A stretch of DNA of 64,000 nucleotides, from assembly GCA_002269645.1 (NCBI GenBank), contig NIVC01003325.1, forward strand, positions 1 through 64,000. Direction: 5' to 3'. The stretch is from Macrostomum lignano. Taxonomy: Eukaryota. Positions 10,089 through 39,779 of this stretch are shown here, piece by piece (position 1 is the first letter of the stretch; each line of letters starts with the position of its first letter). A model generated the notes under the pieces. It saw only the letters and a list, made by a program, of their open reading frames with translations. It searched no databases and was not told the origin of the DNA. The position numbers were made by a program, and so were the translations under genes.

Positions 10089-10297
10089 CTACAGCAGCTG
10101 GCAGGAGCAGCAGGAGTTGCTGGGCTGAGCGGCACCGCCTGCAGGCGGCTGCTTCTGCGGAATGTAAGAGAAACTCGGCGGCAGGTCGAAGCTCGGGCCA
10201 TCGAACAGCATCCTGCGGGTGCAGTGCCGGGCGGCTGTCCGTCTGTCTGTCTGTTTGTCTGTCTTAATGTCTGTCTGTCTGTCTGTCTGTTTGTCTA

Positions 10298-10334
<37 letters not shown>

Positions 10335-10351
10335 GTGTGTCTGTCGGTCTA

Positions 10352-10390
<39 letters not shown>

Positions 10391-10417
10391 GTCTGTGTGT
10401 CTGTCTGTCTTAATGCC

Positions 10418-10462
<45 letters not shown>

Positions 10463-10489
10463 GTCTGTGTGTCTGTCTGTCTTAATGCC

Positions 10490-10526
<37 letters not shown>

Positions 10527-10585
10527 GTCTGTCTGTCTGTCTATCTGTCTGTCTATCTGTCTGTGTGTGTGTCTGTCTTAATGCC

Positions 10586-10622
<37 letters not shown>

Positions 10623-13600
10623 GTCTGTCTGTCTGTCTATCTGTCTGTCTATCTGTCTGTGTGTCTGTCTGTCTGTCTGTCGAGAGCTCAAACAGTGAAC
10701 TGTGAACACAGTATTGAACGCACCTGACAACGGTGAGTCGGTATCGTCCGTTGTAAGCCAGCTCAGGCCTGTAGGTGAGCTCTGTATTAATGGACGCAGC
10801 AGTCGGGTCCACGTACATGTTGAATGTCTCGGCAGTGAGAACTCTACAGTCTGAAAGCAAGAGCAAGTTTCAAAGTAGTTTATGAGAAATCTTGTTTAAG
10901 AGGACTCTAGTTTATGAGCAATGTAGTTTGTGGGGACTCTAATTTATGAGGATTCTAGTTGTCCCAGATTGAGGAATCAGAAGCGCACGTAAACACTGGA
11001 GCCACTCACTGGCCTTGGCGGCGCCATCAAGCAGTCGCTGCATGAATCTGTTCAGCGGTTCGAAACTCTTCACCGAGATCCGGTCGGGCACAAACAGCTT
11101 CGAGGTCACCAGGCCCGAGTTTGTGGGCAGGCCTGTCTGCAGCCCGGCTGTGAGAGGCGACTTCACGTAGGCCACCTGGGTGGGGAATTAATGAGGGATT
11201 TCGCTTGATTTCAGATCTATCACTTCTGTACACACTTCTTTGAACACACATCCCTGTGTACAATCTTTGTACACACCTCTGAACAAACCTCTGTACACAT
11301 CCATCTGTACACACCTCTGAAAAAAACTCTGTACACATCCATCTGTACACACCCATCTGTACACACCCATCTGTACACATCCATCTGTACACACCCATCT
11401 GTACACACCCATCTGTACACATCCATCTGTACACACCCATCTGTACACACCCATCTGTACACACCCATCTGTACACACCCATCTGTACACACCCATCTGT
11501 ACACACCCATCTGTACACCTATCTGTACACATCCATCTGTACACACCCATCTGTACACACCCATCTGTACACACCCATCTGTACACACCCATCTGTACAC
11601 ATCCATCTGTACACACCCATCTGTACACATCCATCTGTACACACCCATCTGTACACATCCATCTGTACACACCCATCTGTACACATCCATCTGTACACAT
11701 CCATTTGTACACATCCATCTGTACACATCCATCTGTACACGTTTCTGAAGAAATATCTGTACACATCCATCTGTACACACCCATCTGTACACATCCATCT
11801 GTACACACCCATCTGTAAACATCCATCTGTACACATCCATATGTACACACCCATCTGTACACACCCATCTGTACACATCCATCTGTACACACCCATCTGT
11901 ACACATCCATCTGTACACGCCTCTGAACAAATATCTGTACACATCCATCTGTACACGCCTCTGAACAAATATCTGTACACACCCATCTGTACACGCCTCT
12001 GAACAAATATCTGTGCATATCTATCCGTACACACATCTGTACACATCCTTCTGTAAACATCTCTGTACCGGTACACCTCTCTGTACACATTTCCCCTGAG
12101 CACAGCTCTCCTCACCCGGATGCAGGTGTGCTCCCTGAAGGGCACGCCAGCCGGCAGGAACTCATAAGACATGTTGCCGTCAAGTTGCAGCAGTTTGTTC
12201 ATGTTGCTGGGCCCCAGCTGCTGCTGATCGTCCGCCTCGCGTTGACTGCGCAGAGCGATTTGCACCGGGCTCATTAGGAAGTCTGCGGGTGTATCGGTAT
12301 GGGTATGGGACACTTTTGCTAGGTAAGCACACGTGGGAGACGTGGGAGACAGGAAAAGCAGGCCAGATAAAGGATAGGAATGATAGAGATTATAGGAGAT
12401 GGGAAACTACTCGTAGGATAGGGGGAAGGAGAGACGAGGAGAGATAAGAGGGGAGACGGGAGAGAGGAGATGGGAGATGGGAAGTGAAAGAGGGGAGACG
12501 GGATAGGGGAGATGGGAGACGGGAGAGGGGAGATGGGAGACGGGAGAGGGGAGATGGGAGACGGGAGAGGGGAGATGGGAGACGGGAGAGGGGAGATGGG
12601 AGACGGGAGAGGGGAGATGGGAGGGGAGACGGGAGAGGGGAGATGGGAGATCGGAGAGGGGAGATCGGAGATCGGAGAGGGGAGATAGGAGATGGGAATT
12701 GGAAGAAGGGAGACGGGATAGGGGAGATGGGAGACGGGAGAGGGGAGATGGGAGGGGAGACGGGATAGGGGGGTTGGGAGATCGGAGAGGGGAGATGGGC
12801 AAGGCAAGAGAGTAGAGACAGAACAAGTACATAGAGCACCAACCGCAGGTGGTGATGTTGAAGCTCTGCACGTCGGTGACCCGAGCTCCGGTGAGAGTGG
12901 AGGCAAACGACAGCGCATTGGTCAGAACAGTCTGGTAATCTTCGTATCGATTTGGCGCGGGAATGATCATGCTGTGCCTGTGCAAGTTGCTGTGCATTTG
13001 GCGGGGCTTGTAGTCCGGGTGCACGTCTGGCACGAATACCTGGATAGAGTTAGCGGGAGACTTGGTATTATTGGATTCCTATCAAGCATATCTCTCTTGT
13101 CAATATTTTAAGGCTCTTTCTTATAGGGTTTTAGGGCGATTTCTTTTAGGGTTTTAGGGCGATTTCTTATAAGGTTTTAGGGCGATTTCTCATAGGGTTT
13201 TAGGGCGATTTCTCATAGGGTTTTAGGGCGATTTCTTATAGGGTTTTAGGGCGAATTCTCATAGGGTTTTAGGGCGATTTCTCATAGGGTTTTAGGGCGA
13301 TTTCTCATAGGGTTTTAGGGCGATTTCTCATAGGGTTTTAGGGCGATTTCTCATAGGGTTTTAGGGCGATTTCTCATAGGGTTTTAGGGCGATTTCTCAT
13401 AGGGTTTTAGGGCGATTTCTCATAGGGTTTTAGGGCGATTTCTTATAGGGTTTTAGGGCGATTTCTCATAGGGTTTTGGGGCGATTTCTCATAGGGTTTT
13501 AGGGCGATTTCTCATAGGGTTTTAGGGCGATTTCTCATAGGGTTTTAGGGCGATTTCTTATAGGGTTTTAGGGCGATTTCTCATAGGGTTTTAGGGCGAT

Positions 13601-16153
13601 TTTTCATGAGTTTTTTAAGCGATTTCTCATGAGGTGTTTAAGCGATTTCTCATGAGGTGTTTAAGCGATTTCTCATGAGGTGTTTAAGCGATTTCTCATA
13701 GGGTTTTAGGGCGATTTCTCATAGGGTTATAGGGCGAGTTCTCATAGGGTTATAGGACGAGTTCTCATAGGGTTATAGGGCGAGTTCTCATAGGGTTTTA
13801 GGGCGAGTTCTCATATGGTTATAGGGCGAGTTCTCATAGGGTTTTAGGGCGAGTTCTCATAGGGTTTCAGGACGATCCATAGAATTCCATAGTCGCAAGG
13901 CCAACTGCGCCAACCTTGATCCCGATCTCCTGCCGCGGCAGCGGGTCTCCCACAATGTAGAACAGCCGGTAATAAAACAGCCGCATCCTGCTGACCTCTG
14001 CCAGGTGCCACTGAACCGTGGCGTCCAAGTCGAACTTTCGCTGATCAACTGCACACCGAAGCAGCATGGTCTGGACACCGCAGATCCTGCCAGGCGGAGG
14101 ACTGGCCGACAGCCATTCGTTGATCCTGGGCAGAAACTCGGACAGCGGCTCAACAAAGGGCACGGAGAACTCTTTAGTAAAGGTTGGCACACAGGCGGAC
14201 ATGCCGTAGTTGTCCATGCCGCCAGCGGACTCGTCAAAGCCGAACCCGGGCCGCACTTGAGCGGCAATGGTTCGCTGCTCAATTCTCGGCATAGCGTTGA
14301 TGTACCAGATCTGGGTTGGCTCGATCTCCTTCAGGCTGGCCCGCGGCTCCTGCCGGCACCACAGGCGGAGCCCGACGACGAAGGCGCGGATGAGGCGGCC
14401 AGGCTCGTGCTGCAGGGCCGCCTCGGGCTGCAGCTCGCCCTGCATGTTGGCCATCCGCTCGATGCACTCGCACCGGACCAGGGCGGAGATGCCGCGGTTG
14501 CTCGCCAGCCAGTTGTTGGCGGCCGACACCACCGTGCTTGAGGGATAGAATGGATGCACTTTTGAGAACGAAAAGTACATGTGCACTTTTAGCGATGGAA
14601 AATTTAATAGATGCGCATGAGACTCTGAAAAAAGAGTTGATTTGATAGATACTCGTAGCTATGAGATTCTGAAAGAGATTTGATTGATGGTAATGAGATT
14701 CTGAGAGAGATGGGGAATGAGGCTCCCAGAGAGATTTGACAGTCAGGCATGAGACTCTGAGAGAGATTTGACAGACGGGCATGAGACTCTGAGAGAGATT
14801 TGACAGTCAGGCATGAGACTCTGAGAGAGATTTGACAGACGGGCATGAGACTCTGAGAGAGATTTGACAGTCAGGCATGAGACTCTGAGAGAGATTTGAC
14901 AGTCAGGCATGAGACTCTGAGAGAGATTTGACAGTCAGGCATGAGACTCTGAGAGAGATTTGACAGTCAGGCATGAGACTCTGAGAGAGATTTGGCAGTC
15001 AGGCATGAGACTCAGAGAGATTTGACAGACGGGCATGAGACTTTGAGAGAGATTTGACACATGGTTATGAGATTCTGAGAGAGATTTTATATATGGCTAT
15101 GAGACTCTGAGAGAGATTTGATACATGGCTATGAGATTCTGAGAGAGATTTTATATATGGCTATGAGACTGAGAGAGATTTGACAAATGGACAGGAGACC
15201 GCAGTACCACCAATACAGAGCTAGACTTGCTCACTTAAACGGCATAAACTGCGGACACCGCTGCGCCTGCAGGTTACCCGGGGCAACGCAGGCTGGGAAG
15301 AAATCCACCGCAGTCAGCAGCTGCTCGAAACGCTGCATTGGCCGGTCGATCGACGAATTCGAGCCTTTGACAGACGAGCCCTGCGGCAGGGTCGCCGACT
15401 GCGGCGGCGGTGGATATCTCGGCTGGCATGGAATCGGCGGTGGGCAGGCCGAGGCGTCATCGTTGGCGTAGGCGGGCAGCTGGTACAGGTCGGCGTCTGG
15501 AATGCGTTGCCGTGGGGCTTTGCATCCGCCTACTCACCCCTTCCGCCCACGCATCCGCCTACTCACCCTTCCACCCACTCATCCGCCTACTCACCCCTTC
15601 CGCCCACGCATCCGCCTACTCACCCTTCCACCCACTCATCCACCTACTCACCCCTTCCGCCCACGCATCTGCCTACTCACCCTTCCACCCACGCATCTGC
15701 CTACTCACCCTTCCGCCCACGCATCCGCCTACTCACCCCTTCCGCCCACGCATCCGCCTACTCACCCTTTCCGCCCACGCATCCACCTACTCACCCTTTC
15801 CGCCCACGCATCCACCTACTCACCCTTTCCGCCCATGCACCCGCCTACTCACCCTTTCCGCACACGCACCTGCCTACTCACCCTTTCCGCCCACGCATCC
15901 GCCTACTCACCCTTTCCGCCCATGCACCCGCCTACTCACCCTTTCCGCACACGCACCTGCCTACTCACCCCTTCCGCCCACGCATCCGCCTACTCACCCC
16001 TTCCGCCCAAGCATATCCGTAGCCACCGCCTACGCATATCAATAAACTCCAACTCAACGCAATCACTGTCTCACCTCTTATAGCCTCATAGTAGCCAAGC
16101 GGCAGGTTGAATCCCGGCTCCTTGGTGGCATCATTAGGCTCAGTTGACGCCAT
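10089..16153 (-). CDS. Uncharacterised 587-aa protein with four internal ~110-130-aa repeats and a C-terminal CaaX (SCCSCQLL*)
   Basis: Exons 16153-16075, 15496-15235, 14536-13915, 13039-12844, 12282-12116, 11175-10989, 10850-10724, 10212-10089. All are GT-AG and phase-compatible, and the total of 1764 nt is open. Repeated pattern F.P...F/YE.F/L...N/EWL...V..ET/QT...R.FY/RV.Y. Confidence 0.8.
10238..10681. repeat. (GTCT)n compound microsatellite
   Basis: Direct inspection. Confidence 0.95.
11225..12090. repeat. 14-bp minisatellite CCATCTGTACACAC
   Basis: Direct inspection. Confidence 0.95.
12425..12800. repeat. Polypurine 7-mer repeat (GGGAGAC/GGGAGAG/GGGAGAT)
   Basis: Direct inspection. 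Confidence 0.9.
13120..13870. repeat. 23-bp minisatellite TAGGGTTTTAGGGCGATTTCTCA
   Basis: Direct inspection. Confidence 0.95.
14690..15185. repeat. 32-bp minisatellite CATGAGACTCTGAGAGAGATTTGACAGTCAGG
   Basis: Direct inspection. Confidence 0.95.
15520..16015. repeat. 29-30-bp minisatellite GCATCCGCCTACTCACCCTTTCCGCCCAC
   Basis: Direct inspection. Confidence 0.95.
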
Positions 16154-16699
16154 GCTGGCAGAAATTTGTTTTGGAATAACAAGAAATTTGAGCAGAAATT
16201 TATAGACAGAATGAAGAATATCTAACCTATATTAATGTATACTACATCGCTATATACTAGGAGCATTCGAAAATAATGAAAGTTGCAGTTAATTATCAGA
16301 TTGACAGTACAGAATTTGTTTATAATTGCTAATAAAGCAGCATAATATAATAAATTGCACCATAAATTAAAACATACATTAAACAGCTTATAAAAGTACA
16401 AAGCAAATGAACTAAATAAAAATATAAATAGCATCGGTCATATTTCGAGAAGTAATGCAAAGATTAGCGGCCATTAAAAAGAGAGAAGCGTCAGACTACC
16501 AATGTAAACTAACAAAAATGCTTATCATTATATTAAATCATGAAATTTTAGAAAATGTCATCAACTGTTTAATGCGAACGCAATAAAATGCGATATCGCC
16601 TTAATAGAAATGTTCCTAGCATCTTTAATAAGTAAAATATTAACTGGAAACATCTCACAGTGCTTGCAGATTTTCGATTTACATAAAACTGAATTTGAA

Positions 16700-17074: not shown

Positions 17075-27192
<10,118 letters not shown>

Positions 27193-27399
27193 CTGCAAGA
27201 AGGGGATCAGCGGTCGGGGGATTCAAAGGATTAAAGCTGGGATTAAACGACTCAGTTGGATGATTAGTAATGAAAAGTAATGAAATCTGAATGCTTAACT
27301 AAATCCGAATGTAAGGGCACCGATGTATTGTAGGAAATGGGATTTTTATCAGTGATGAGGATTCACCATGAAATGGGATTGTAATTGGGGATTACAGTA

Positions 27400-27870
27400 A
27401 GGATGGGATCACATCTATGTATGGGGATTAAATATGAAATGGGATCAGAGATGGGCATTAAATATGAAATGGGATCAGATATGGGCAATGAAATGGGATT
27501 AGAGATGGGGATTAAATTTGAAATGGGATCAGATTTGGGGAATAAATATGTAATGGGATCAGATTTGGGGAATAAATATGAAATGGGATCAGATTTGGGG
27601 AATAAATATGAAATGGGATCAGATTTGGGGAATAAATATGAAATGGGATCAGATTTGGGGAATAAATATGAAATGGGATCAGATTTGGGGAATAAATATG
27701 AAATGGGATCAGATTTAGGGAATAAATATGTAATGGGATCAGATTTGGGGAATAAATATGTAATGGGATCAGATTTGGGGAATAAATATGAAATGGGATC
27801 AGATTTGGGGAATAAATATTTAATGGGATCAGATTTAAGGAATAAATATGTAATGGGATCAGATTTGGTG
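27400..27870. repeat. 30-bp minisatellite AATAAATATGAAATGGGATCAGATTTGGGG
   Basis: Direct inspection. Confidence 0.95.
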
Positions 27871-28550
27871 ACAATTTTGAACGGGAATTTTAGTGGAAAT
27901 TAATTAGTTTACTAGGAATTCGAAGGCTAATGAATGAATAAGCCCAAAGCCAATTCACAAAGTCCTGACAGCAATTATAGCTTTTTCAATCAGCATTTAA
28001 AAATGAATAATAAAGTGATTGACAAACTAACCAATATATAAATGAAACTCTGTAATACTATGTGAGATCTTTGAAGTACATTATAAAGTAAAAAAGTGGC
28101 GACTAACTCTGTGTTACAAAACTAGCAGCGCAATTATATTATTATTAATGATATTTTCAGAAGGTCAGGAGACCCAGGCACATTTCACAACTGTTTCATG
28201 GCAACTCTGCAGTGTTATTGACAGACTGGAATTAAATAGAAAATCACAGAAAATTGACAAGATTTGAGATAGCTCTTTGTTTTAAATAGTATCCATCAGG
28301 GAAAGGCCTGTTCATTACACACTACTGCAATAAGTAGCTAATCAAGTGCTTAAAATCGCCCAAGTATAAATTGTTAAGGCCAAAAAAATATTAAATTGAA
28401 AAAAAGCATAAAAAATATGAGAAATTTTAAAGCTCCAAGTGGCACATAAAATCGCAGTAACAGAAAGTGAGCAGGGCTGAGTCAAAGCAGTGCAACTAAA
28501 GGGTATTTAAAGTACAATTTGTACAAGTCGACTCTGGGATGACCCTGGGA

Positions 28551-28850
28551 GGGTTACAGCCTAGTGGTTAGAGCGGCGGACTCACTCACGACTTGAAAGG
28601 TCGGGGGTTCGATTCCTGACCCACTCGGAACATTTTGTGCCATTGAGCAAGACACTTTAAATTTCTGCACTGCTTCAGTTTGTTTAACCCAGCTGTAGAA
28701 TGGATGCCAGGATTAGCTGGGGTATCTGAGGCTGTATGTGGTGACCCCCCCCCCCAGTCCTTGGACTGAAAAGCCGTACGCAGCCTTCACGTCGGTTTTA
28801 CATCTGGCCCATTAGGGCAGGTGTAGTAAATATTTATTATTATTATTAGG
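28551..28850 (+). mobile_element. tRNA-derived SINE family B with V-SINE-like core and (TTA)n tail
   Basis: A-box TAGTGGTTAGAGCG, B-box GGTTCGATTCC, core TTGAGCAAGACACTT...TGCTTCAGT, tail TTATTATTATTATTA. Confidence 0.75.
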
Positions 28851-29424
28851 GGCCGTATAGTCGCACCTGAGGCGTACCAGAGTCGCTGTAGAATCATCTG
28901 AGTCGAAAGATTCTCAGAAAAAGTCACCAGAGTTGCCAGAGTCACTAGCGACTTGTTTTCAGTGACTCTCTATGATTTAGGGATAGGAATCCCAGGATTT
29001 TAGGGATCCATTACTCTTTAGTTATTCTTGCCCCGATAACGTTTTCAACGGCTAACCAGTAGCAGCTAATACAAGTGAATAAATTTAATTACACAAAATA
29101 TGCTAGCAAAGGCGCGAAACAGAATTCATACAGACAGGTGCACCGTGTACTTACTAATAATTTAATAATATTTAAATCCGATGGCAGATTTACAACTGTG
29201 GAACAGGGAACTGTACTTCGGAGGTACCAGACAGATTGGGTCGCAAAAACTGCAGAAGCAGTCAAAAAAGAAGCAGGACAATGTTTCAGGCTAATCAACA
29301 CAGCACCAGTAAAAATGAAGCATTCAAATACAGCATGCTGTCTAAATCAGATTACATCAGGCTTCTTTATTTTCAAGTAGGATAGATCATAATGTCTAAA
29401 TTCTTAAATTGCGATAATTCAAAT

Positions 29425-30600
29425 CAGGATATGGGATCATAGTTGGGATCAATTGGGATCAGATTATGGGAATCACAGTTGGGATCAATTAGGATCAGAT
29501 TATAGAAATTAGAGTTGGGATAAATTGGGATCAGATTACAGGAATCACAGTTGGGATAAATTGGGATCAGATTAAGGGAATCACAGTTGGGATCAATTGG
29601 GATCAGATTAAGGGAATTACAGTTGGGATAAACTAGGATCAGATTACAGGAATCACAGTTGGGATAAATTAGGATCAGATTATAGAAATTAGAGTTGGGA
29701 TAAATTGGGATCAGATTACAGGAATCACAGTTGGGATAAATTGGGATCAGATTAAGGGAATCACAGTTGGGATCAATTGGGATCAGATTAAGGGAATTAC
29801 AGTTGGGATAAACTAGGATCAGATTACAGGAATCACAGTTGGGATAAATTGGGATCAGATTATAGAAATTAGAGTTGGGATAAATTGGGATCCGATTACA
29901 GGAATCACAGTTGGGATAAATTGGGATCAGATTAAGGGAATCACAGTTGGGATCAATTGGGATCAGATTAAGGGAATTACAGTTGGGATAAACTAGGATC
30001 AGATTACAGGAATCACAGTTGGGATAAATTGGGATCAGATTATAGAAATTAGAGTTGGGATAAATTGGGATCAGATTACAGGAATCACAGTTGGGATAAA
30101 TTGGGATCAGATTAAGGGAATCACAGTTGGGATCAATTGGGATCAGATTATAGAAATTAGAGTTGGGATAAATTGGGATCAGATTACAGGAATCACAGTT
30201 GGGATAAATTGGGATCAGATTAAGGGAATCACAGTTGGGATCAATTGGGATCAGATTAAGGGAATTACAGTTGGGATAAATTGGGATCAGATTAAGGGAA
30301 TCACAGTTGGGATCAATTGGGATCAGATTAAGGGAATTACAGTTGGGATAAATTGGGATCAGATTAAGGGAATCACAGTTGGGATCAATTGGGATCAGAT
30401 TAAGGGAATTACAGTTGGGATAAATTAGGATCAGATTATGGGATCACAGTTGGAATCAATTAGGATCAGATTATGGGATCACAGTTGGGATCAATTGGGA
30501 TCAGATTACAGGAATCACAATTGGGATCAGATTATGGGAATCACATTTGGGGATGGAATCAGATTACAGGAATCACAGTTAGGATCAATTGGGATCAGAT
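29425..30600. repeat. ~36-bp minisatellite GGGATCAGATTACAGGAATCACAGTTGGGATAAATT with higher-order periodicity
   Basis: Direct inspection. Confidence 0.95.
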
Positions 30601-30657
30601 TCAGGGAAATTTGAACTCTGGGATTGCAACCAATTTGAATCAGACTAGAGGTCTTAC

Positions 30658-30699
30658 AGTGAACTCAGAGGCGGGCACAGGAGCGCTAAGGTAAGGCAT
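30658..30699 (-). CDS. Candidate first coding exon of the ARHGEF39-like gene (MPYLSAPVPASEFT)
   Basis: ATG at 30699, 14 codons, GTAAGA donor in phase 0 matching the phase-0 acceptor at 27192. I found no other suitable ATG exon between 27200 and 30650. Confidence 0.5.
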
Positions 30700-30709
30700 C
30701 GCGATTAAA

Positions 30710-33704
30710 TCACTTTTGAAAGCCCAGCATAGCCAGGTGCATATTCCGCCTGTGACTCTGTATTTCGGTGAATTTATCCGAACTGGTAGCGCTGGGCAGC
30801 AGGCCCTGCTGTACGTAGCGCAGGTAATGCAGCAGATTGCAGGTGGCAATGATTCTATTCCTGGCGCAGTGGGATATATAGTGCCAAGGGGCGTCGGAGC
30901 TCTCAGAGAGTCGAACCCGATAGTGACAGAGCTTTGACTTCATCAGCGAGCAGCGCTGCTTGCCCTGGGGCGCCGAGCGGTTGGAGGTGAGCGCCTCAAT
31001 GTGCAGCTGGTTGGTGAGGGCCGCCTCGATCACCTGGGCGCCGAGGTCGCGATTGGCGAACTCGAGACAGCACCGAATGTCTCTGCGGGGCGGAGCGAGG
31101 AATGATTATCGAGTGGGGTAATTTAGGGATTGGGTTAGGGGTGTTAGGGATTGGAATAGCAGGATTCAGGGATTGAAATCCCAGGATTTAGGGATTGGAA
31201 TCTCGGGATTTAGGGGTTGGAATCCCAGGATTTAGGGAATGGAATCTCGGGATTTAAGCATTGGAATCCCAGGATTTAGGGAATGGAATCTCGGGATTTA
31301 AGCATTGGAATCCCAGGATTTAGGGATTGGAATCCCAGGATTCAGGGATTGGAATCCCAGGATTCAGGGATTGGAATCCCAGGATTCAGGGATTGGAATA
31401 CCAGGATTCAGGGATTGAAATCCCAGGATTCAGGGATTGGAATCTCGGGATTCGGGGATTGGAATACCAGGATTCAGGGATTAAAATCCCAGGATTTAGG
31501 GATTGGAATCTCGGGATTCAGGGATTGGAATACCAGGATTCAGGGATTGAAATCCCAGGATTTAGGGATTGGAATACCAGGATTCAGGGATTGAAATCCC
31601 AGGATTTAGGGATTGGAATCTCGGGATTTAGGGATTGGAATCTCGGGATTTAGGGATTGAAATCCCAGGATTCAGGGATTGGAATCCCAGGATTCAGGGA
31701 TTGAAATCCCAGGATTTAGGGATCTTGGAATCCCAGGATTCGGGGATTGGAATCCCACGGCTCTCACCTGTTAACAATGCGGTCCATAAAAGCGGACTTG
31801 CTCGCATCCAAGCCGGGAGAATTCAACCAGTCCAGAAACTCGCCGTAGACCAGCGGGTCCAGCTCAAAGCTCTGAATGTCACTGTCCGTCAGCTGCTCCG
31901 CCTGTCGCACATCAGAGTAGGACCCTGTGCGCCGGTGCCCGCACTCAGACAGCGAAGGCGAGGCTTGCTCGATCAGCGCTTTGAGGGCGGCAACCTCGCT
32001 AGTCAGCACTTCGTTCTGGCGCTCCAGCTCGATGCAGCGCTTCTCAACACGGTCCTTGGCTTGTAGCGCTTCGCTTACCTGATAATTGGCGGGGATGGGT
32101 AAGGGACTGGAGCTTGAGAATATGGGATTTGGGAGCTTCAGTGATGCTTCAGTGATCTGAGAGACTTGATGCTTCAGTGATCTGAGAGACTTGATGCTTC
32201 AGTGAACTGAGAGACTCAGCTTCAGTGATCTGAGAGACTTGATGCTTCAGTGATCTAAGAGACTTGATGCTTCAGTGATCTGAGAGACTTGATGCTTCAG
32301 AGATCTGAGAGACTTGATGCTTCAGTGATCTAAGAGACTTGATGCTTCAGTGATCTGAGAGACTTGATGCTTCAGTGATCTGAGAGACTTGATGCTTCAG
32401 TGAACTGAGAGACTCAGCTTCAGTGATCTGAGAGACTTGATGCTTCAGTGATCTAAGAGACTTGATGCTTCAGTGATCTGAGAGACTTGATGCTTCAGTG
32501 ATCTGAGAGACTTGATGCTTCAGTGATCTAAGAGACTTGATGCTTCAGTGATCTGAGACTTGATGCTTCAGTGATCTGAGAGACTTGATGCTTCAGTGAA
32601 CTGAGAGACTCAGCTTCAGTGATCTGAGAGACTTGATGCTTCAGTGATCTAAGAGACTTGATGCTTCAGTAATCTGAGAGACTTGATGCTTCAGTGATCT
32701 GAGAGACTTGATGCTTCAGTGATCTAAGAGACTTGATGCTTCAGTGATCTAAGAGACTTGATGCTTCAGTGATCTGAGAGACTTGATGCTTCAGTGATCT
32801 GAGAGACTTGATGCTTCAGTGATCTGAGAGACTTGATGCTTCAGTGATCTGAGAGACTTGATGCTTCAGTGATCTGAGAGACTTGATGCTTCAGTGATCT
32901 GAAAGATTTGATGCTTCAGTGATCTGAGAGATTTGATGCTTCGGTGATCTGAGAGACTTGATGCTTCAGTGATCTGAGAGACTTGATGCTTCAGTGATCT
33001 GAGAGACTTGATGCTTCAGTGAACTGAGAGATTTGATGCTTCAGTGATCTGAGAGACTTGATGCTTCAGTGATCTGAGAGATTTGATGCTTCAGTGATCT
33101 GAGAGACTTGATGCTTCAGTGATCTGAAAGATTTGATGCTTCAGTGATCTGAGAGACTTGATGCTTCAGTGATCTGAGAGACTTAATGCTTCAGTGATCT
33201 GAGAGACTTGATGCTTCAGTGATCTGAGAGATTTGATGCTTCAGGGATCTGAGAGATTTGATGCTTCAGGGATCTGAGAGATTTGATGCTTCAGTGATCT
33301 AAGACACTTGAGCTTCGCTACATTCTCACCTGTCTATTAGCCTCCTGAAACAGGGAGTCGTGCAGTTCCAAGCACTCGCTATTCAAATCCTCCACGTACT
33401 GCTTCATCTGAGCATTCTCACTAGCCGTGCTCATGTACAGTTTGCGAGCTTCGGCCAGCTCTCTAAGCACTGATAATCCGCTGGAGATGCTGTCCTCGCC
33501 GCTAGGGAGACCGGGAGAGGCGGCGGAGGTTCCAGATGGTGAGCTCAGGTCGGCTGCAGCCTGTTCAGAGGCCTCAGATTTGGACACTACAAGCATAGAG
33601 CGAGTTCGAGGCTTAACAGCTGGTAGAGAACTTTTCATTGGGGCAGCTGGGTTGCTGCCACCGCTGCAGCTGCTGTTGTTGCTGGTGCGGTCTTCGTCTG
33701 ACAT
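30710..33704 (-). CDS. RAB3IP: Rab GEF of the Sec2/Rabin8 family (RAB3IP/RAB3IL1-like)
   Basis: Exons 33704-33330, 32078-31768, 31082-30710 (TGA), phases compatible. Sec2 coiled coil SLFQEANRQVSEA...VLTSEVAALKALI; C-terminal DIRCCLEF, CSLMKSKLCHYRVRL, CARNRIIATCNLLHYLRYVQQGL, RRNMHLAMLGF. The paralogue cannot be resolved by eye. Confidence 0.9.
31125..31756. repeat. 22-bp minisatellite GGGATTGGAATCCCAGGATTCA (hairpin-like unit)
   Basis: Direct inspection; a stray unit is at ~28980. Confidence 0.95.
32135..33305. repeat. 25-bp minisatellite GATGCTTCAGTGATCTGAGAGACTT
   Basis: Direct inspection. Confidence 0.95.
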
Positions 33705-35932
33705 TATTAATTTATAGTATAGTGTTGACAGTTGTCAACTTTAGGCAACCAGAAGTCTGGTAGCGTTGGGTTTTGTTTTAAAGCAGAGAACAATGACACT
33801 TCAAGTGTAATTAATTGAGCTGAAAAATGGAAGTTGACGCAAATTATTGCGCCTAATATTAGGTCACTATGCAACTTATCAGTTATTACTAAAATTTTGC
33901 TTTTCAATACAATAAGAAATAATATTCTATAGCAGTATGTTTTTAACATTGTATGTGAATTATAACAAAAAATGAATTCTTAATATACGCTTGTACACAA
34001 ATATGCACTGCATGGCTATGTCACTCAATTGTTATAGGGATTATCTAAAATTTATACATGGCAATATAATACTAGCCATATTGATCACCTTTATATATGC
34101 TTATAATCCATATGCCTAAAGCCAAAGCCCTATCCCCAAATTCACTAAGTACACTAGACATTCTAGCATTCAGCCATTTTTTTAGATCATAGAGCCTAAA
34201 AATCCATTATAAAAGAAAATATAATTGTAAATAATAAATAATAGATAACAAAAATGCAGTTTTAATTTAAGTTAGTTTTAATTTTTGAGACAAGATTATT
34301 AGCATAGCCAAGCATATTTAGCTCCATACTTAGGATCAAGAAGGTGTCCTGTATGCCAGATTTTTCTGGCTTGCATTAGCCCTTCATAGTTCATTATTCA
34401 ATGGTGTGCATGTTTGGCATGCTTGAATCTTAAAAAAAAGTATTTGGTGTAGAAATCAATTTATTACACTGCAATATACACTGCGAACAAAAATGTGTAT
34501 TGTATAATAAGTAAGAAAGGTAATTTAAAAGAAAATTTCAATGTCTATATATTGCTGAATGTCTATGGTCTTTTAAAAATGTATTATGCCAATAAATTGT
34601 TAATTATCCTGCATCATTGCAATGGCTTGAATGATTAGGTTATCCCTATATTCTCTAAGTTTTGTTTGATTACTCTCAAACATTTGTAAAATGCTACAAA
34701 ATTGCATATTTGTTGCCATGCATATATTTGCATATATTCCATGCATATATTTTAACCCATTAAGACTACATTTTATGTAATACTTAAGCCTTTTAAGTAT
34801 GAAAGTATGACACAACTCACATGAGTGACAATTATCCCATTAGCATCAGCCTATACATATTTTCTAAAATATACACAAAACAACTAAATTTGAATGCTAA
34901 AGCATGTACAAATACTGAATATACCAAAGGCAACTAAAGCCTTATCCCAACTAGCTCTACCTATAAAACTGATAGTTATACCAATCATTTCTTTTACTTA
35001 TCTAAAAGTTGGTTGTTAGTATATGCCAAAAATGATTTAAAAAATGCTTTGTGATAGAAAACTGATATTGATAAAAAAGTTTACATTGCAAGATAACATG
35101 ATAACATTTCATTGACTTTACATACTTTTTGATTAAATTTAATTGCTTATCTTAGTGTGTCACTTTTGTCTCTTTTGTGTTTCTGTAACTAAAACTAGCC
35201 CTAGGCCCATATTATAAATAACTTAAATATTAGTAAAAGATATAGTTTTCTATAGTTTTAGTTTTCATTATTGCATAAAAATTGCATAAAAATTATTACA
35301 TAAAAATATAGTTTTCATTATTGCATAATACAATTTGACTCTAGCTTGGACTCTTACTTGAATATCTGAGGCTAGGTCAGTTAAATTTAACTAGTTCTAG
35401 ACCAACTAGGGAGTCTAGATCTAATTTATTGGTTGAAGATCATGAAAGCAGAAGCAGAGTTGAACCTGAAGTTTCTGAAAGTCACCATCAGCATTGGCCA
35501 AGGCAAGGAGTTCCACTACCACTTAGACTACTACTGCAGCTGTAAGATGTTTCAGTATTAGAGACTGTAAAGACTTCACTTTAGATTGTAGAACGATATA
35601 AGCTTGATACGAGGCAAGCCACTGCGATTTTTATTGTAAGTATTGAGCACGATACGTTTAGTGGATAAGGCTTAGGGGTGGAGAACAAAAGTAGCCAGAT
35701 TGAAGAACGTACATGAGTAAGAGAGAGTACATCAAGATATTGTAGAAAGGCGCACAGAGCGAAACAGGTAAAAACACCACCCCCAAACACTGAATAAAGT
35801 ACAAGCTAACATCACTAACAAAAATCAACCCAGCCAAGTCACCACACTCCTCCCCACGAAGATTAAGCGTTGGATTAAAACGGGAATAAAAGACGCAAAT
35901 CAGTTCACAGTCCATAGAAGAACAGTTCAGAG

Positions 35933-38897
35933 TCACTCGTAGCGCAGCCGGTCAGGTTCGGCTCTCGCCCTGGTCGAACGTCGAAGTAGCGCCTCAGAGC
36001 TCAACTCTGGTGCCTGGCCAGGCGTCTCTGCAGGAGCCTCTGGTTGATCGTCAGGCACCTCGACACATGGCGGTTGCTCGGCTTCGGAAGGCGCCGGAGG
36101 CTCCGGCGGCTTGCGCACTTGATCGATGTGCCGACGGACTTCTCGACCATCGTCGAACTGGCAAGAGAAAGACGCAGCCCCAGAGCAGTTGGTCACAACA
36201 GCAGGCTTCCACCTGCCGTCAGCAGCGAAGTCCCTCGCGACGACTGCGTCGCCCATCTCGATGCGGCGGTCATGGGCATGGGCGTCGTGTTGTTGCTTCT
36301 GCATTGCTTGTTGGAGCGCCACCCTGGCCTGTAGGTCAGGCCGAACTCGATCGAGCAGTGTGTGCAGCCGCCTCCCATCAGCAATTTGCAAGGTGGCGCG
36401 CCGGTCGTCGCATGGGGCGTCACACGGTAGGTAAGCAGGAAGCGCGCCACTCGATCTTCTAGTGAGCCGTCTTTTTGCTTAGCGAGCGACTTCTTCAGGG
36501 TCTGGACAGCGCGCTCCGCTTGGCCATTTGACGCCGGGTGGTACGGGGCAGTTCGTACGTGCCGGATGCCGTTCCGCTGCAGAAAATCTTCCATTTCATC
36601 GCTGACCAGGTTGCGCCCATTGTCCGTCACGATGATGTCCGGCAGCCCATGTGTAGCGAAGCTCTGCCGCAGCCGCTGGATGGTTGCCGTGGAAGTTGCT
36701 GACGCCAACACATGTACCTCCATCCACTTGGAATGGGCGTCGACATTTTCGACAATCACCAGCAGCATTTTCCCTTCGATCGGACCCGCAAAATCCAGAT
36801 GAAGGCGCGACCACGGCCTGTCAGGCCAGGCCCAGGGATGCAGCGGCGCAGGCCCCGGTGACTTCTGCAGCTCCTGGCAGTCCGAACAAGCGCCGGCGAG
36901 CTGCTCAATTGCCTCGTCCAGCTTTGGCCACCAGAAGAAGCTGCGGGCCAGCGCCTTCATTCTAGATGCGCCCTGGTGTCCTTGGTGCAAACAATGGAGA
37001 AGGGCTGTCCGGCCTGCCTCTGGAACGATGACTCGAGTTCCCCAGAGAAGGCAGCCGTCTTGAGTACTCAGCTGGTCGGCCCTGGATCTGTACGGCTGCA
37101 ACTCCGGCACGGTCCGCTCAGGCCAGTTGCCGACCTCCGTGAAGCGCAGTGCCTTTGACAGGATGGGGTCAGTTCGGGTCCAGGCTCGAATGTCGCCGGC
37201 GGTCACTGGCCCTTCGCCCAGCATGTCCATGACCAGGACAACGTCCGCAGGTGTCGGGGCCTTCGTCGGTCTTTCAGGCAGTGGCAGTCGGCTCAGTGCG
37301 TCTGCACGCAGTAGTGATTTGCCAGATCGGTGTTCCATCGAGTAGCTGTAGCCCGCCAGGATGAGCGCCCACCTCTGAATCCTTCCGGACGCCATGGCGG
37401 GAATTGGCTTAGACTCATGCAGGAGTCCTAGCAACGGCTTGTGGTCGCTGACGAGGGTGAATTTCCGGCCGTAAAGGTAAGAGTGAAATCTTTTTACCCC
37501 GAAAACGATCGCCAGAGCTTCTTTGTCCAGTTGCGAGTACTTCGCCTCGGCATCGTGCAGGGAACGCGAAGCGAAAGCGATCGGTCGATCGCAACCGTCA
37601 ACCCGATGACTGATGACGGCGCCGATGCCGTACGGAGAGGCATCGCACTCCAGCACCAACGGCTTTGTGTCGTCGAAATGCGCGAGGACCGGCGCTTTGG
37701 CGAGCAGCGCCTTGCACTTCTTAAAGGCGGCATCCTGCGAAGCGCCCCAGCACCAGTTGGCGCCTTGGTTTAGCAAGCGGTGCAGCGGGGCCAACTCGGC
37801 TGACAGGTTCGGCAGGAACTTGCTGTAATAGTTGACCATTCCGAGGAAGCTGCGTAGCTGGGTCACGTCCTGCGGTGCCGGAGCGTCCACGATGGCACGC
37901 ACTTTGTCTTGCAGCGGATGCAGGCCAGCGGCATCGATCCGATGACCCAGATAGCAGACGCTGTCCTGCATGAAGTTACACTTGCTCAGGCCGCAGCGCA
38001 GTCCACTTTGGTGCAGCCGTTGCAGCACCTGTTCCAGCGATTGCAAATGGCTCTCGTCGTCAACCCCGGTGATAATCAGGTCATCGATGAAGCAGGCCAC
38101 ATGGGGAATGGTCTGCAGCAGGCTGTCCATGTGGCGCTGGAAAATTCCAACGGCCGGAGCGACACCAAACGGGAGGCGGGTATAGCGAAGCAGGCCTTTG
38201 GAAGTGTTTATAGTGCAGATCTGCTGGGCAGCTTCATCGAGCGGCATCTGGGAGTAAGCCTGCGACAAGTCCAGCTTAGTGAACTTTTTTCCTCCTGCCA
38301 GCTTTGGAAAAAGTTCCTCGATTCGCGGCAAGGGGTACTTGTCCGGCTCCACGGCGAGGTTGACGGTCTGCTTAAAGTCGGCACAGATGCGCACGGTGCC
38401 GTCTGACTTTAGAACGGGAACAATCGGCGATGCATAATCTGAGCTGCTGACTGGCTTGAGCACGCCCTGCTCAATCTCCTTTTCGAGTTGAGCCTCCACC
38501 TTAGCCTTGAGCGCAAACGGAACGTTGCGAGCTTTGAAAAAGCGAGGCCGGGCATCAGGCTTCAAATGCAGTTGCACAGGTGGACCGTTGTACTGACCCA
38601 ATCCGGGCTCGAAAACAGCTGCATACTTTTCCAGCAAGGCTCGGATTCTGGGGTGCTCACCGTCTTTTTGCACCTGGTTGATGCTTCTCCAGTCAAGCGG
38701 CAAGCCGGCCAGCCAGTCCCGGCCGATCAGATTCGATCCGGAGCCCTTGACGACGAGTAGCGGGAGCTCCTTGGAGATCTCTCCGATACGCACGCAGACG
38801 TTGATTTTGCCGTGTAGAGGAACCGGCTCCCCTGAATACGTACGTAGCTGTGCGTTGGCCGGCTCCAGCTTGGGCAGCCCACGGAGCTCAGAGCGAA
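35933..38897 (-). CDS. pol: Pol (protease end, RT, RNase H, integrase) of the LTR element, with a frameshift at ~36380
   Basis: RT motifs LDLSQAYSQM, LPFG, FIDD; RNase H ECDASPYGIGAV; integrase HQGHQG..CSDC, LHLDFAGP, VTDNG, NGQAERAV. The C-terminal part RRLHTLLDRVRPDL continues in another frame to the stop at 35933. Confidence 0.93.
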
Positions 38898-39779
38898 AGT
38901 ATCCGATGAGATGAGCGAGACGGATGCACCAGTGTCAATCTCCATTCGAACAGGCGTCTCCTCGATGATGACAGTCGTCTCAATCGGGGGAATCTTGGTC
39001 CTCGGCTCAGCCATCACATGCAGCGTGTGCGCCTCCTCTTGGTCCACCTCCACCTCTCTAACGGCCTGGTCTATGCGACGATTGGCAGCTGCTGGCGACT
39101 TGCAGGCCGCAGCTGTGTGGCCCACCTTCGAGCAGTTGAAACACTTCTTTTCCAGAAAGGGACACTTGCTTGCCACATGTCTCTGGGAGAGGCATCTGAA
39201 ACAGCGCTTCGCTAGAGCCGTCTGTCTGGCGATCTGGAAGGCCTCTTGGCTAGCGGATTTCGTCACAAGCGAGTTGCCTTCAGCAGCCAAGGCCTGAGCC
39301 TGTGCCAGAGTCAACGCGGTGTCAAGCGTCAAATTTTTCTCTGACAGCAGTCTCCGCTGGATGGTGTCGTCATTAATGCCGAGCACGAGGCGGTCTCTGA
39401 GCATGGCACTCAGGCTGTCACCGAAGTTGCAATCCTGCGCCAATCTGCGCAGCTCGGCGAGAAAGTCGGCGATGGTTTCGCCAGGCTGACGGCCGCGGCT
39501 GTAAAACCGGAAACGGAGCACAATCTCGGGCGGTGCAGGATCAAAATGATCTTTTAACTTTTCGCAGATCGTAGCGTAGTCAGACTTGGCCGGCTCTTGC
39601 GGAGACAGCAGGCTGGCGATCAGCTGGTAGGTCTTCCTGCCGCAGACGCTCAGAAGAACCGCACGCTGCTTTTCAGGTCTGATGTCGTTCGCCTCGAAGA
39701 ACTGCTCCAATCTGGCTTGATACTGCTGCCATTTTTCACTCCCCTCTTCAAAGGGTTCAATTGAGCCCAACAAGCTCAT
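38727..39779 (-). CDS. gag: Gag (two CCHC zinc knuckles) and start of the aspartic protease of the LTR element
   Basis: MSLLGSIEPF..LEQFFEAN..MLRDRLVLGI; CFRCLSQRHVASKC and CFNCSKVGHTAAAC; protease motif IDTGASVSLI. The frame shifts to the pol frame at ~38897. Confidence 0.93.
   Translation of the reverse strand: MSLLGSIEPFEEGSEKWQQYQARLEQFFEANDIRPEKQRAVLLSVCGRKTYQLIASLLSPQEPAKSDYATICEKLKDHFDPAPPEIVLRFRFYSRGRQPGETIADFLAELRRLAQDCNFGDSLSAMLRDRLVLGINDDTIQRRLLSEKNLTLDTALTLAQAQALAAEGNSLVTKSASQEAFQIARQTALAKRCFRCLSQRHVASKCPFLEKKCFNCSKVGHTAAACKSPAAANRRIDQAVREVEVDQEEAHTLHVMAEPRTKIPPIETTVIIEETPVRMEIDTGASVSLISSDTFALSSVGCPSWSRPTHSYVRIQGSRFLYTAKSTSACVSERSPRSSRYSSSRAPDRI

What the first reader, a model, noticed from the sequence alone, without database searches (positions are those of the whole stretch)
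27192..30712. RhoGEF start codon lies 10 nt after the Rab GEF stop: candidate bicistronic or zero-gap operon mRNA
Seen: on the minus strand the RAB3IP-like TGA (30712-30710) is followed by TTTAATCGCG and then an ATG (30699). This opens 14 codons and ends in a strong GTAAGA donor in phase 0, which fits the ATG-less DH exon acceptor at 27192. There is no room for a promoter or a polyA signal between the two ORFs. Known: SL trans-splicing and operons occur in flatworms and nematodes, and termination-reinitiation occurs over short gaps. Inference: a Rab8-type GEF and a Rho GEF are co-expressed from one transcript, either by reinitiation or by trans-splicing at the AG just before the TGA (ctttcaaaAG|TGA), which would make the two mRNAs mutually exclusive.
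Basis: partly seen in the sequence, partly recalled or inferred. Interest (0 to 1): 0.78.

Follow-up and report, generated by a model that had tools for sequence, protein, structure and literature searches.

The report
Spliced-leader operon, not a zero-gap bicistron
In this flatworm (Macrostomum lignano) the Rho GEF gene most likely gets both its 5' end and its start codon from the trans-spliced leader RNA joined at position 27192. The ATG found 10 bases after the Rab GEF stop is most likely a chance feature of that gene's 3' untranslated region, so the locus is an ordinary flatworm operon.

Summary
The sequence facts are correct. On the minus strand there is TGA at 30712-30710, a 10-nt spacer, ATG at 30699, 14 open codons, GTAAGA, and a phase-0 acceptor at 27192.

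The window is M. lignano contig NIVC01003325.1, and GenBank already annotates three minus-strand genes here:
- Mlig007695g1, a Rabin8/RAB3IP-like protein
- g2, a DH-PH RhoGEF, marked 5'-partial
- g3, an unknown protein, marked 5'-partial

In all three genomic copies of the locus, the g2 CDS begins at or within 3 nt of the cttcTTGCAG| acceptor. That acceptor matches the published trans-splice motif [T/C]TNCAG. The species' single 35-nt spliced leader ends in ATG, and joined at 27192 it reads ATG|TCT CTG, in frame.

No genomic ATG can serve. An in-frame TGA lies 33 nt upstream, and the first in-frame ATG downstream would truncate the DH domain.

The proposed donor is GT in this copy only. The two other copies have ATAAGA and still carry annotated RhoGEF genes. 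ATG-to-donor combinations of this kind occur in 44% of shuffled spacers.

Co-transcription (an operon) is plausible from the shared transcriptional-unit name. A zero-gap bicistron, reinitiation, and SL addition at 30713 are not supported. This is a known kind of system and of low interest.

The parts
33330..33704 (-). Rabin8/RAB3IP-like gene (GenBank BOX15_Mlig007695g1, PAA51976.1), exon 1, starting with a genomic ATG at 33704
   Evidence: Exon model solved on the L001 copy to give the annotated 352 aa. The exact protein is in GenBank. Mapped to the window.
31768..32078 (-). Rabin8-like gene, exon 2 (Sec2p coiled coil)
30710..31082 (-). Rabin8-like gene, last exon, including the stop TGA at 30712-30710
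   Evidence: Pfam RAB3A-like_C is matched to profile end 150/150. The gene call ends at 30710.
30652..30699 (-). Read here as part of the Rabin8-like 3' UTR or intercistronic RNA, not as a coding exon.
   Evidence: Sequence. GT is AT in copies L002 and L003, with an S-to-F change. The chance rate is 44%.
29432..30587 (.). 36-bp minisatellite array filling the first third of the spacer
   Evidence: TRF
29366..29371 (-). First AATAAA after the Rabin8-like stop, a candidate poly(A) signal for g1
   Evidence: Its use has not been shown.
27422..27868 (.). 30-bp minisatellite array in the spacer
   Evidence: TRF
27223..27225 (-). In-frame TGA 33 nt upstream of the acceptor. It closes the RhoGEF frame in genomic DNA, so no contiguous genomic start codon exists.
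   Evidence: Sequence. The ORF listing shows the frame open only from 27198.
27193..27198 (-). TTGCAG 3' splice acceptor behind a pyrimidine tract, the inferred SL trans-splice site. The SL (...TTGCATG) joined here reads ATG|TCT CTG GCA, in frame.
   Evidence: It matches the published trans-splice motif [T/C]TNCAG, and the SL sequence is published (PMC8629364). The annotated 5'-partial CDS starts at or within 3 nt of it in 3 copies.
26918..27192 (-). RhoGEF (BOX15_Mlig007695g2, PAA51975.1, 'partial'), exon 1: a 38-residue N-terminal tail and the start of the DH domain. The first in-frame genomic ATG is at 26979, inside the DH domain.
22938..23222 (-). RhoGEF exon 2 (DH)
21533..21796 (-). RhoGEF exon 3 (end of DH, start of PH)
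18445..18744 (-). RhoGEF exon 4 (PH)
17075..17558 (-). RhoGEF exon 5, ending at stop TGA 17077-17075. The five exons give 535 aa from the first Ser, and the 534- and 535-aa versions are exact GenBank proteins.
10089..16150 (-). Third same-strand gene (BOX15_Mlig007695g3, PAA51974.1, 579 aa, 5'-partial, no Pfam domain). Its annotated CDS starts right after a genomic ATG that sits 4-8 nt behind an acceptor, about 920 nt after the RhoGEF stop.

Best explanation
The window is Macrostomum lignano contig NIVC01003325.1. Three genes lie head to tail on the minus strand: a Rabin8/RAB3IP-like Rab GEF (g1), an ARHGEF39/tag-52/FGD-like DH-PH Rho GEF (g2), and an unknown 579-aa protein (g3). They belong to one annotated transcriptional unit.

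The RhoGEF mRNA is made by spliced-leader trans-splicing at the TTGCAG acceptor at 27193-27198. The 35-nt SL (CGGTCTCTTACTGCGAAGACTCAATTTATTGCATG) is joined to base 27192, and its 3'-terminal AUG serves as the initiator codon, in frame (AUG UCU CUG = M-S-L-A-S-T...). Translation gives a 536-aa protein with a complete DH domain.

The ATG at 30699 and the GTAAGA after it lie in the Rab GEF's 3' UTR or the intercistronic RNA, and they are a chance combination. The two GEFs are probably co-transcribed as an operon and separated by polyadenylation and trans-splicing. They are then translated from separate mRNAs.

Shown: the gene identities, the position and frame of the acceptor, the absence of any usable genomic ATG, the loss of the donor in two copies, and the annotation boundaries and names. 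Inferred: that SL reads map to 27192, that the SL AUG is the codon used, and that one promoter drives all three genes.
For: 1. Organism and locus. The RhoGEF composite hits M. lignano BOX15_Mlig007985g2 at 99% identity. Locus L004 is 100% identical to window 43704..20710, and its record coordinates equal the window coordinates.
2. Annotated 5' end. The GenBank RhoGEF CDS is 5'-partial and starts at the first base after TTGCAG in copies L001/L003 and L002, and 3 nt later in the window's own record. According to the authors, gene boundaries in this annotation were cut by TBONE at experimentally mapped trans-splice and poly(A) sites, with the SL trimmed (PMC5730564).
3. SL and motif. The SL sequence ends in ATG, and the trans-acceptor motif is [T/C]TNCAG (PMC8629364). 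TTGCAG fits this motif.
4. Frame and need for the SL AUG. ATG+TCT is in frame with the 535-codon ORF. An in-frame TGA lies 33 nt upstream. Pfam DH covers residues 38-223 with the full 1-180 profile, and the first genomic in-frame ATG, at residue 72, would remove about 33 DH positions.
5. Precedent. Flatworm SL AUGs are used as initiators. [quoted passage not shown] 2006, as cited in PMC9851317, and PMC12582326). The Macrostomum annotators note that the SL's final ATG is a likely start codon (PMC10468722).
6. Against the upstream mini-exon. GT is AT in 2 of 3 copies, and those copies still carry annotated RhoGEF genes of 535 aa and 319 aa.
7. Substitution pattern. The only difference between copies in the first 130 nt of the RhoGEF exon is synonymous (CGG/CGA), whereas the 14-codon ORF carries an S-to-F change.
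8. Operon. g1, g2 and g3 share one TU prefix in each of three copies and have consecutive accessions. g3 is also 5'-partial at an acceptor. In this species 15% of genes are in operons, with repeat-inflated spacers.
Against: - No SL-containing read, cDNA or ribosome footprint could be inspected here. Trans-splicing at 27192 is inferred from how the annotation was built and where the CDS starts.
- The meaning of the shared 'MligNNNNNN' prefix is inferred from the methods text. gN can also number duplicate loci (PMC5816591).
- The stop-to-acceptor spacer is 3517 nt, and still about 1.9 kb after removing the two TRF arrays. That exceeds the 1-kb repeat-adjusted threshold used to call operons in PMC8629364.
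- AATAAA or ATTAAA signals occur from 29371 onward, so g2 could have its own promoter.
- In this particular haplotype the GTAAGA donor exists, and flatworm acceptors are often shared between cis- and trans-splicing (PMC12582326). A minor cis-spliced isoform is therefore not excluded.
Confidence: 0.78

Rival explanations
1. The 14-codon exon (30699-30658) is cis-spliced to 27192, so a single mature mRNA carries both ORFs. The RhoGEF is then translated by termination-reinitiation 10 nt after the Rab GEF stop.
For: The letters are there and the phases fit in this haplotype. GTAAG matches the species' donor motif GT[G/A]AG. The stop-ATG spacing is identical in all copies. Transcriptional units bridging g1 and g2 were assembled, and spliced bridging reads could have contributed to that.
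Against: The donor GT is AT in 2 of 3 copies, which still have annotated RhoGEF genes. All three annotated CDSs start at the acceptor, not at MPYLSAP.... The 14 codons carry a non-synonymous difference. The pattern arises in 44% of shuffles, and a second such candidate exists at 28643-28590. The site lacks the exonic AG of all real donors here. From established knowledge, reinitiation after a 352-codon ORF is inefficient without special elements.
Confidence: 0.05
2. SL trans-splicing occurs at the AG just before the Rab GEF stop (caaaAG|TGA, 30713). This would make the Rab GEF and RhoGEF mRNAs mutually exclusive.
For: An AG is present there.
Against: The SL ends in AUG, so the product would read AUG-UGA, an immediate stop. 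The site is AAG rather than the CAG of the [T/C]TNCAG motif, and it lacks a pyrimidine tract. It would still need the non-conserved 30658 donor. The annotated g2 starts 3.5 kb downstream.
Confidence: 0.01
3. The RhoGEF is SL trans-spliced at 27192 with the SL AUG as its start, but it is monocistronic. It has its own promoter in the 3.5-kb spacer, the upstream RNA is an outron, and the Rab GEF terminates independently.
For: The spacer is about 1.9 kb after subtracting tandem repeats, above the 1-kb operon threshold. Several AATAAA/ATTAAA signals lie between 29371 and 27824. About 60% of trans-spliced M. lignano genes are not in operons.
Against: Three genomic copies each give g1 and g2 (and the third gene) the same transcriptional-unit name, which implies an assembled RNA spanning them. 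The authors state that repeats inflate operon spacers. Transposon-derived sequence such as the SINE-like element near 28600 was not subtracted.
Confidence: 0.15
4. An unannotated ATG-containing 5' exon elsewhere (in the spacer or upstream of g1) is cis-spliced to 27192 and provides the real start.
For: A second phase-0 ATG-to-GTGAGT candidate exists at 28643-28590 and is retained in copy L003.
Against: That candidate lies in a tRNA-SINE-like repeat. A transcript-based CDS would have been extended into any such exon, but it is 5'-partial exactly at the acceptor in three copies. The N-terminal tail length (38 aa before the DH domain) already matches the Paragonimus ortholog (37 aa).
Confidence: 0.03

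Closest known systems
SL trans-spliced operons (transcriptional units) of Macrostomum lignano (Wudarski et al. 2017, PMC5730564; Ustyantsev & Berezikov 2021, PMC8629364)
   Same: Same species and same published annotation. The genes are on the same strand and share one TU name. The downstream genes begin at [T/C]TNCAG-type acceptors. There is a single 35-nt SL. The spacers are swollen by minisatellites and transposons.
   Different: The g1-g2 spacer (3.5 kb, about 1.9 kb without tandem repeats) is longer than the authors' 1-kb repeat-adjusted cut-off. The g2-g3 spacer (about 0.9 kb, about 0.6 kb adjusted) fits it. No paper describes this locus.
Flatworm mRNAs that use the SL 3'-terminal AUG as initiator methionine (Cheng et al. 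2006, J Biol Chem 281:733; 'slORFs', PMC9851317)
   Same: The SL ends in AUG. The acceptor is in phase 0 with the ORF. No genomic AUG can give the full conserved domain.
   Different: The phenomenon was shown experimentally in Schistosoma mansoni. For M. lignano it has only been remarked on (PMC10468722), and for this gene it is inferred.
Caenorhabditis elegans operons resolved by SL2
   Same: A polycistronic pre-mRNA is resolved by 3' end formation of the upstream gene plus SL trans-splicing of the downstream gene.
   Different: C. elegans uses a specialised SL2 and spacers of about 100 nt, and its SLs do not donate the start codon. Here there is one SL, a kilobase-scale repeat-rich spacer and an SL-borne AUG.
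Termination-reinitiation or dicistronic mRNAs (calicivirus TURBS-type; Drosophila dicistronic genes)
   Same: Only the appearance of a stop followed within 10 nt by an ATG.
   Different: There is no evidence here that both ORFs sit on one mature mRNA. The connecting donor is absent in two of three copies.
RAB3IP/Rabin8-GRAB family and ARHGEF39 / C. elegans tag-52 / FGD-like DH-PH GEFs
   Same: g1 has a Sec2p coiled coil plus the Rabin8-like C-terminal domain. g2 has complete DH and PH domains, and its best non-Macrostomum hits are named FGD3-like, tag-52 and ARHGEF39.
   Different: g2 lacks the FYVE domain of true FGDs. The adjacency of the two GEF genes could not be checked outside M. lignano.

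Membership tests
SL trans-spliced operon (flatworm type) | Adjacent genes on the same strand with no opposite-strand gene between them | tested here: met
   g1 33704-30710, g2 27192-17075 and g3 16150-10089 are all on the minus strand. The next gene is convergent.
SL trans-spliced operon (flatworm type) | The downstream gene's mature 5' end is a 3' splice acceptor that receives the SL | tested here: inconclusive
   TTGCAG fits the published motif, and the annotated 5'-partial CDS starts at it in 3 copies. The SL reads themselves could not be viewed.
SL trans-spliced operon (flatworm type) | One primary transcript or promoter for all genes | tested here: inconclusive
   The TU prefix is shared in three copies. 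The naming rule is inferred from methods text. No RNA data were available.
SL trans-spliced operon (flatworm type) | Repeat-adjusted intergenic distance below 1 kb (criterion of PMC8629364) | tested here: inconclusive
   g1-g2 is 3517 nt from stop to acceptor, or 1914 nt after removing TRF arrays. The 3' UTR end and transposon content are unknown. g2-g3 is about 920 nt, or about 600 nt adjusted.
SL-AUG-initiated ORF (Cheng et al. 2006) | The SL ends in AUG | tested here: met
   The published M. lignano SL ends ...TTGCATG.
SL-AUG-initiated ORF (Cheng et al. 2006) | The AUG is in frame with the main ORF at the acceptor | tested here: met
   The exon starts in phase 0 at 27192, and 535 codons run to TGA at 17075.
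SL-AUG-initiated ORF (Cheng et al. 2006) | No genomic AUG can give the complete protein | tested here: met
   An in-frame TGA lies at 27225-27223. The first in-frame ATG (26979, residue 72) lies inside the DH profile, which starts at residue 38-39.
SL-AUG-initiated ORF (Cheng et al. 2006) | Translation actually starts at the SL AUG | not testable with these tools
   This needs Ribo-seq, N-terminal proteomics or reporter assays.
Bicistronic mRNA with termination-reinitiation | Both ORFs are on one mature mRNA, joined by the 30658 donor | tested here: not met
   The donor GT is AT in 2 of 3 copies, and the annotated mRNAs are separate and start at 27192.
Bicistronic mRNA with termination-reinitiation | The stop-start arrangement is beyond chance or conserved | tested here: not met
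   44% of shuffles give an equivalent candidate. The only comparison available is between near-identical copies.
RAB3IP/Rabin8 family | Sec2p coiled-coil GEF region plus the Rabin8-like C-terminal domain | tested here: met
   PF25555 E=7.6e-42 over 1-150/150. PF06428 E=5e-06, 26.8 bits, just under the 28.5 cut-off.
Dbl-family RhoGEF (DH-PH) | Complete DH domain followed by a PH domain | tested here: met
   PF00621 E=4.1e-42 over 1-180/180. PF00169 E=1.2e-09.

The most novel reading that the evidence does not exclude
In the haplotype of this window only (GTAAGA instead of ATAAGA), part of the polycistronic pre-mRNA is cis-spliced from 30658 to 27192. This would give a true Rab-GEF/Rho-GEF bicistronic mRNA whose second ORF starts 10 nt after the first stop. 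It would be an allele-specific switch between SL-AUG initiation and reinitiation at one shared acceptor.
Probability: 0.05. Interest if true: 0.55.

Novelty: new member of a known kind. Interest (0 to 1): 0.14.

Why it matters
The value here is mainly corrective. In flatworm genomes, an "ATG-less" first coding exon behind a good acceptor usually means the start codon comes from the spliced leader. It does not usually mean a hidden upstream exon. GenBank flags such CDSs as "partial" although the protein is probably complete apart from its first Met. Knowing this avoids false bicistron or fusion calls; UniRef already holds a fused g2+g3 model of 1082 aa.

If the operon is real, a Rab8-type GEF and a Rho GEF share one promoter. 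That is a small hint of coordinated control of vesicle traffic and actin. Operon membership alone does not show a functional link.

Tried and rejected
- The SL sequence was searched in the window and no SL RNA gene was found.
- ARAGORN found no tRNA in the spacer, although a tRNA-SINE-like stretch is visible.
- I tried to rebuild the 345-aa third-gene product of copy L001 by exhaustive splice search, to look up its name. The attempts gave a time-out, then 0 solutions, then 500 ambiguous solutions, and I abandoned this. The name of the window's own g3 came instead from the cluster look-up.
- Synteny in another flatworm: the Paragonimus heterotremus ortholog fills a 40-kb contig, and the 9.4 kb upstream holds no Rabin8-like sequence. 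The contig is too short to decide.
- The gene names Mlig007985, Mlig005324 and Mlig007695 were not found in any paper text or in the held supplements of PMC5816591.
- No Macrostomum transcript-derived protein beginning MSLASTP... or MPYLSAP... was in the protein collection, so no direct cDNA check was possible.
- A fusion reading (a donor at caaaa|GTGATT skipping the stop) was rejected. Its phase 2 does not fit the 27192 exon, which hits a stop after about 30 codons in that frame (reasoned), and the Rabin8 domain ends at its canonical end.

Full report
**What is in the sequence**

On the minus strand the Rab GEF reading frame ends ...GGC TTT CAA AAG TGA, with TGA at 30712-30710. It is followed by TTTAATCGCG and then ATG at 30699. 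Fourteen codons (MPYLSAPVPASEFT) run to 30658 and are followed by GTAAGA.

At 27200-27193 there is tcttgcag, and the next exon starts with TCT at 27192 in phase 0. That exon has no ATG before the DH domain.

Pfam confirms the two gene identities:
- The last exon, 31082-30710, matches the Rabin8-like C-terminal domain up to profile position 150 of 150. The TGA is therefore the normal end of this protein.
- The 27192 exon opens a RhoGEF (DH) domain.

**Which genome and which genes**

A composite of the RhoGEF exons hits Macrostomum lignano protein BOX15_Mlig007985g2 ("partial") at 99% identity. The next-best hits are arthropod and flatworm proteins named FGD3-like, tag-52 and ARHGEF39.

Fetching the contigs that encode the neighbouring proteins showed three copies of this locus in assembly GCA_002269645.1 (Mlig_3_7). 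One of them, NIVC01003325.1, is 100% identical to the window over 22,995 bases, and its record coordinates equal the window coordinates. The window is therefore the first 64 kb of that contig.

Exact-sequence look-ups gave the GenBank names of the three genes:

| Gene | Product | GenBank name and accession | Source |
|---|---|---|---|
| g1 | Rab GEF, 352 aa | BOX15_Mlig007695g1, PAA51976.1 | |
| g2 | RhoGEF, 534 aa, "partial" | BOX15_Mlig007695g2, PAA51975.1 | |
| g3 | unknown protein, 579 aa, "partial", same strand | BOX15_Mlig007695g3, PAA51974.1 | |

The other two copies are named Mlig007985 g1/g2 and Mlig005324 g1/g2/g4.

I rebuilt the RhoGEF as five exons: 27192-26918, 23222-22938, 21796-21533, 18744-18445 and 17558-17075. 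This gives 535 codons from the first Ser. The 535-aa and 534-aa versions are both exact GenBank entries, and the stop at 17075 agrees with the gene call. The protein has a complete DH domain (residues 38-223, profile 1-180 of 180) and a PH domain.

**Where the RhoGEF mRNA starts**

In copies L001/L003 and L002, the annotated 5'-partial CDS begins at the first base after cttcTTGCAG. In the window's own record it begins 3 nt later.

The authors built this annotation from RNA-seq "transcriptional units". These were cut into genes by their TBONE pipeline only where trans-splice and poly(A) sites had been mapped experimentally, and the spliced leader was trimmed off (PMC5730564). A 5'-partial ORF that starts exactly at an acceptor is what a trimmed, SL-trans-spliced mRNA looks like.

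The species has a single 35-nt SL, CGGTCTCTTACTGCGAAGACTCAATTTATTGCATG. The enriched motif at its trans-splice acceptors is [T/C]TNCAG (PMC8629364), and TTGCAG fits it.

Joining the SL to 27192 gives ...UUGCAUG|UCU CUG GCA, so the SL's terminal AUG is in frame with the whole ORF. No genomic alternative exists:
- The frame is closed by TGA at 27225-27223, 33 nt upstream of the acceptor.
- The first in-frame ATG downstream (26979, residue 72) lies about 33 positions inside the DH profile.

Use of the flatworm SL's 3'-terminal AUG as initiator is established for Schistosoma mansoni. There the AUG is in frame in 28% of trans-spliced mRNAs, and more than 40 cDNAs need it (Cheng et al. 2006, as summarised in PMC9851317, and PMC12582326). 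Macrostomum genome annotators have noted the same likely role (PMC10468722).

**Why the ATG at 30699 is most likely not a start**

1. The donor is not conserved. The window (identical to L004) has ACT|GTAAGA, but copies L002 and L003 have ACT|ATAAGA. Both of those copies still carry annotated RhoGEF genes that begin at the same acceptor.
2. The 14 codons carry a non-synonymous difference between copies (TCT to TTT). In contrast, the only difference in the first 130 nt of the RhoGEF exon is synonymous (CGG/CGA).
3. None of the three transcript-based proteins contains MPYLSAP....
4. The pattern is not unusual. The spacer has four GTRAG sites on this strand, and two of them have an upstream in-frame ATG in phase 0 (30699-30658 and 28643-28590). 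In dinucleotide-preserving shuffles, 44% give at least one such candidate.
5. All four real RhoGEF donors have AG|GT at the exon edge, whereas the candidate has CT|GT.

This would place the SL AUG directly before UGA, and the site does not resemble the CAG-type motif.

**Is it an operon?**

In each of the three copies, the non-homologous genes g1 and g2 (and the third gene) carry the same MligNNNNNN prefix. By the authors' description, that prefix names a transcriptional unit or a cluster of near-identical units. The suffix gN can also number duplicate loci, so my reading of the names is an inference. Unrelated adjacent genes can only share a prefix if they were cut from one assembled RNA.

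The third gene is also 5'-partial at an acceptor a few bases before its own ATG, about 920 nt after the RhoGEF stop. Of that distance, 318 nt is a 34-bp tandem repeat.

The g1-g2 spacer is 3517 nt. Two minisatellite arrays occupy 1603 nt of it, and a tRNA-SINE-like element is also present. The remaining distance of about 1.9 kb is above the 1-kb repeat-adjusted limit used in PMC8629364. AATAAA or ATTAAA signals occur from 29371 on.

Co-transcription is therefore likely but not shown. A separate promoter with an outron remains a fair rival, at about 15%.

**Mechanism proposed**

A primary transcript runs through g1, g2 and g3. The g1 mRNA is cleaved and polyadenylated somewhere after its stop, possibly after AATAAA at 29371. 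The SL is spliced onto 27192 and again just upstream of the g3 ATG. Each mRNA is then translated on its own, and the RhoGEF starts at the SL-borne AUG.

- Shown: the anatomy, the frames, the polymorphism and the annotation boundaries.
- Inferred: the SL junction itself, use of the SL AUG, and the single promoter.

**Comparison with known systems, and novelty**

This is the standard M. lignano arrangement: 30% of genes are trans-spliced and 15% are in operons. It is combined with the known flatworm SL-AUG start. It differs from C. elegans operons in having one SL, long repeat-rich spacers and an SL-donated start codon. It is not a termination-reinitiation bicistron.

The locus is already annotated in GenBank, though its CDS is labelled partial and no paper discusses it. 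I file it as a new member of a known kind, with low interest.

The most novel reading still open is that the GT haplotype produces some cis-spliced bicistronic RNA. I put that at about 5%.

**Dead ends**

- Synteny could not be tested, because the Paragonimus contig is too short.
- No transcript-derived Macrostomum protein with either N-terminus is in the collections.
- The attempt to rebuild the L001 third gene by brute force failed.

Noticed in passing
window 35565-40072 (minus-strand ORFs 36193-38793 and 38727-39806; LTRs near 35581-35936 and 39808-40064): A Ty3/Gypsy-type LTR retrotransposon with long gag and pol ORFs sits about 1.9 kb upstream of the Rab GEF ATG, in the same orientation. 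Copy L003 has an empty site there, and copy L002 has 2.5 kb of different sequence. The insertion is therefore private to this copy and could affect the unit's promoter.
   Followed up: partly
window 24916-25857 versus 22151-23092: A 942-bp duplication at 99.3% identity places a second copy of the 3' 155 nt of RhoGEF exon 2, including its GTGAGG donor, inside intron 1. It could be a decoy exon or an assembly artefact of the 21-bp minisatellite next to it.
   Followed up: partly
window 16150-16165; L001 16610-16630: The acceptor before the third gene differs between copies: TTTCAG|CCAGCATGG in L001, TTTCTGCCAG|CATGG in the window. GenBank starts the CDS at different bases (SMASTEPND... versus ASTEPND...). 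The SL's last five bases (GCATG) equal the genomic bases before GCG, so SL trimming is ambiguous here. The SL AUG would be out of frame with this gene's own ATG.
   Followed up: partly
L001/L003 RhoGEF (P0001), corresponding to window about 18640-18700: The Mlig007985g2 copy is annotated as only 319 aa, with a frameshifted tail (...[24 protein letters not shown]) inside the PH exon. This suggests a 1-nt indel, meaning either a decaying copy or an assembly error.
   Followed up: no
UniRef A0A1I8FYC9 (P0026), covering window 27201-10089: An older gene model of 1082 aa fuses the RhoGEF and the third gene and starts FLQ-SLAST, reading through the acceptor. It is an example of operon genes being merged by ab initio prediction.
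   Followed up: no
window about 28540-28700 (plus-strand element): A stretch resembling the 3' half of a tRNA (GGTTCGATTCC-type T arm in reverse complement) lies in the spacer. It is probably a tRNA-derived SINE. ARAGORN calls no tRNA. It also hosts the second chance ATG-to-GTGAGT candidate.
   Followed up: partly
window-wide, for example 32142-33316, 31146-31757, 29432-30587, 27422-27868, 24916-25644, 13106-13876, 11246-12061: Almost every intron and spacer of the three genes is filled with minisatellite arrays of 14-36 bp units and (CTGT)n/(TCTA)n runs. These differ in copy number between the three genomic copies and account for most length differences between them.
   Followed up: no
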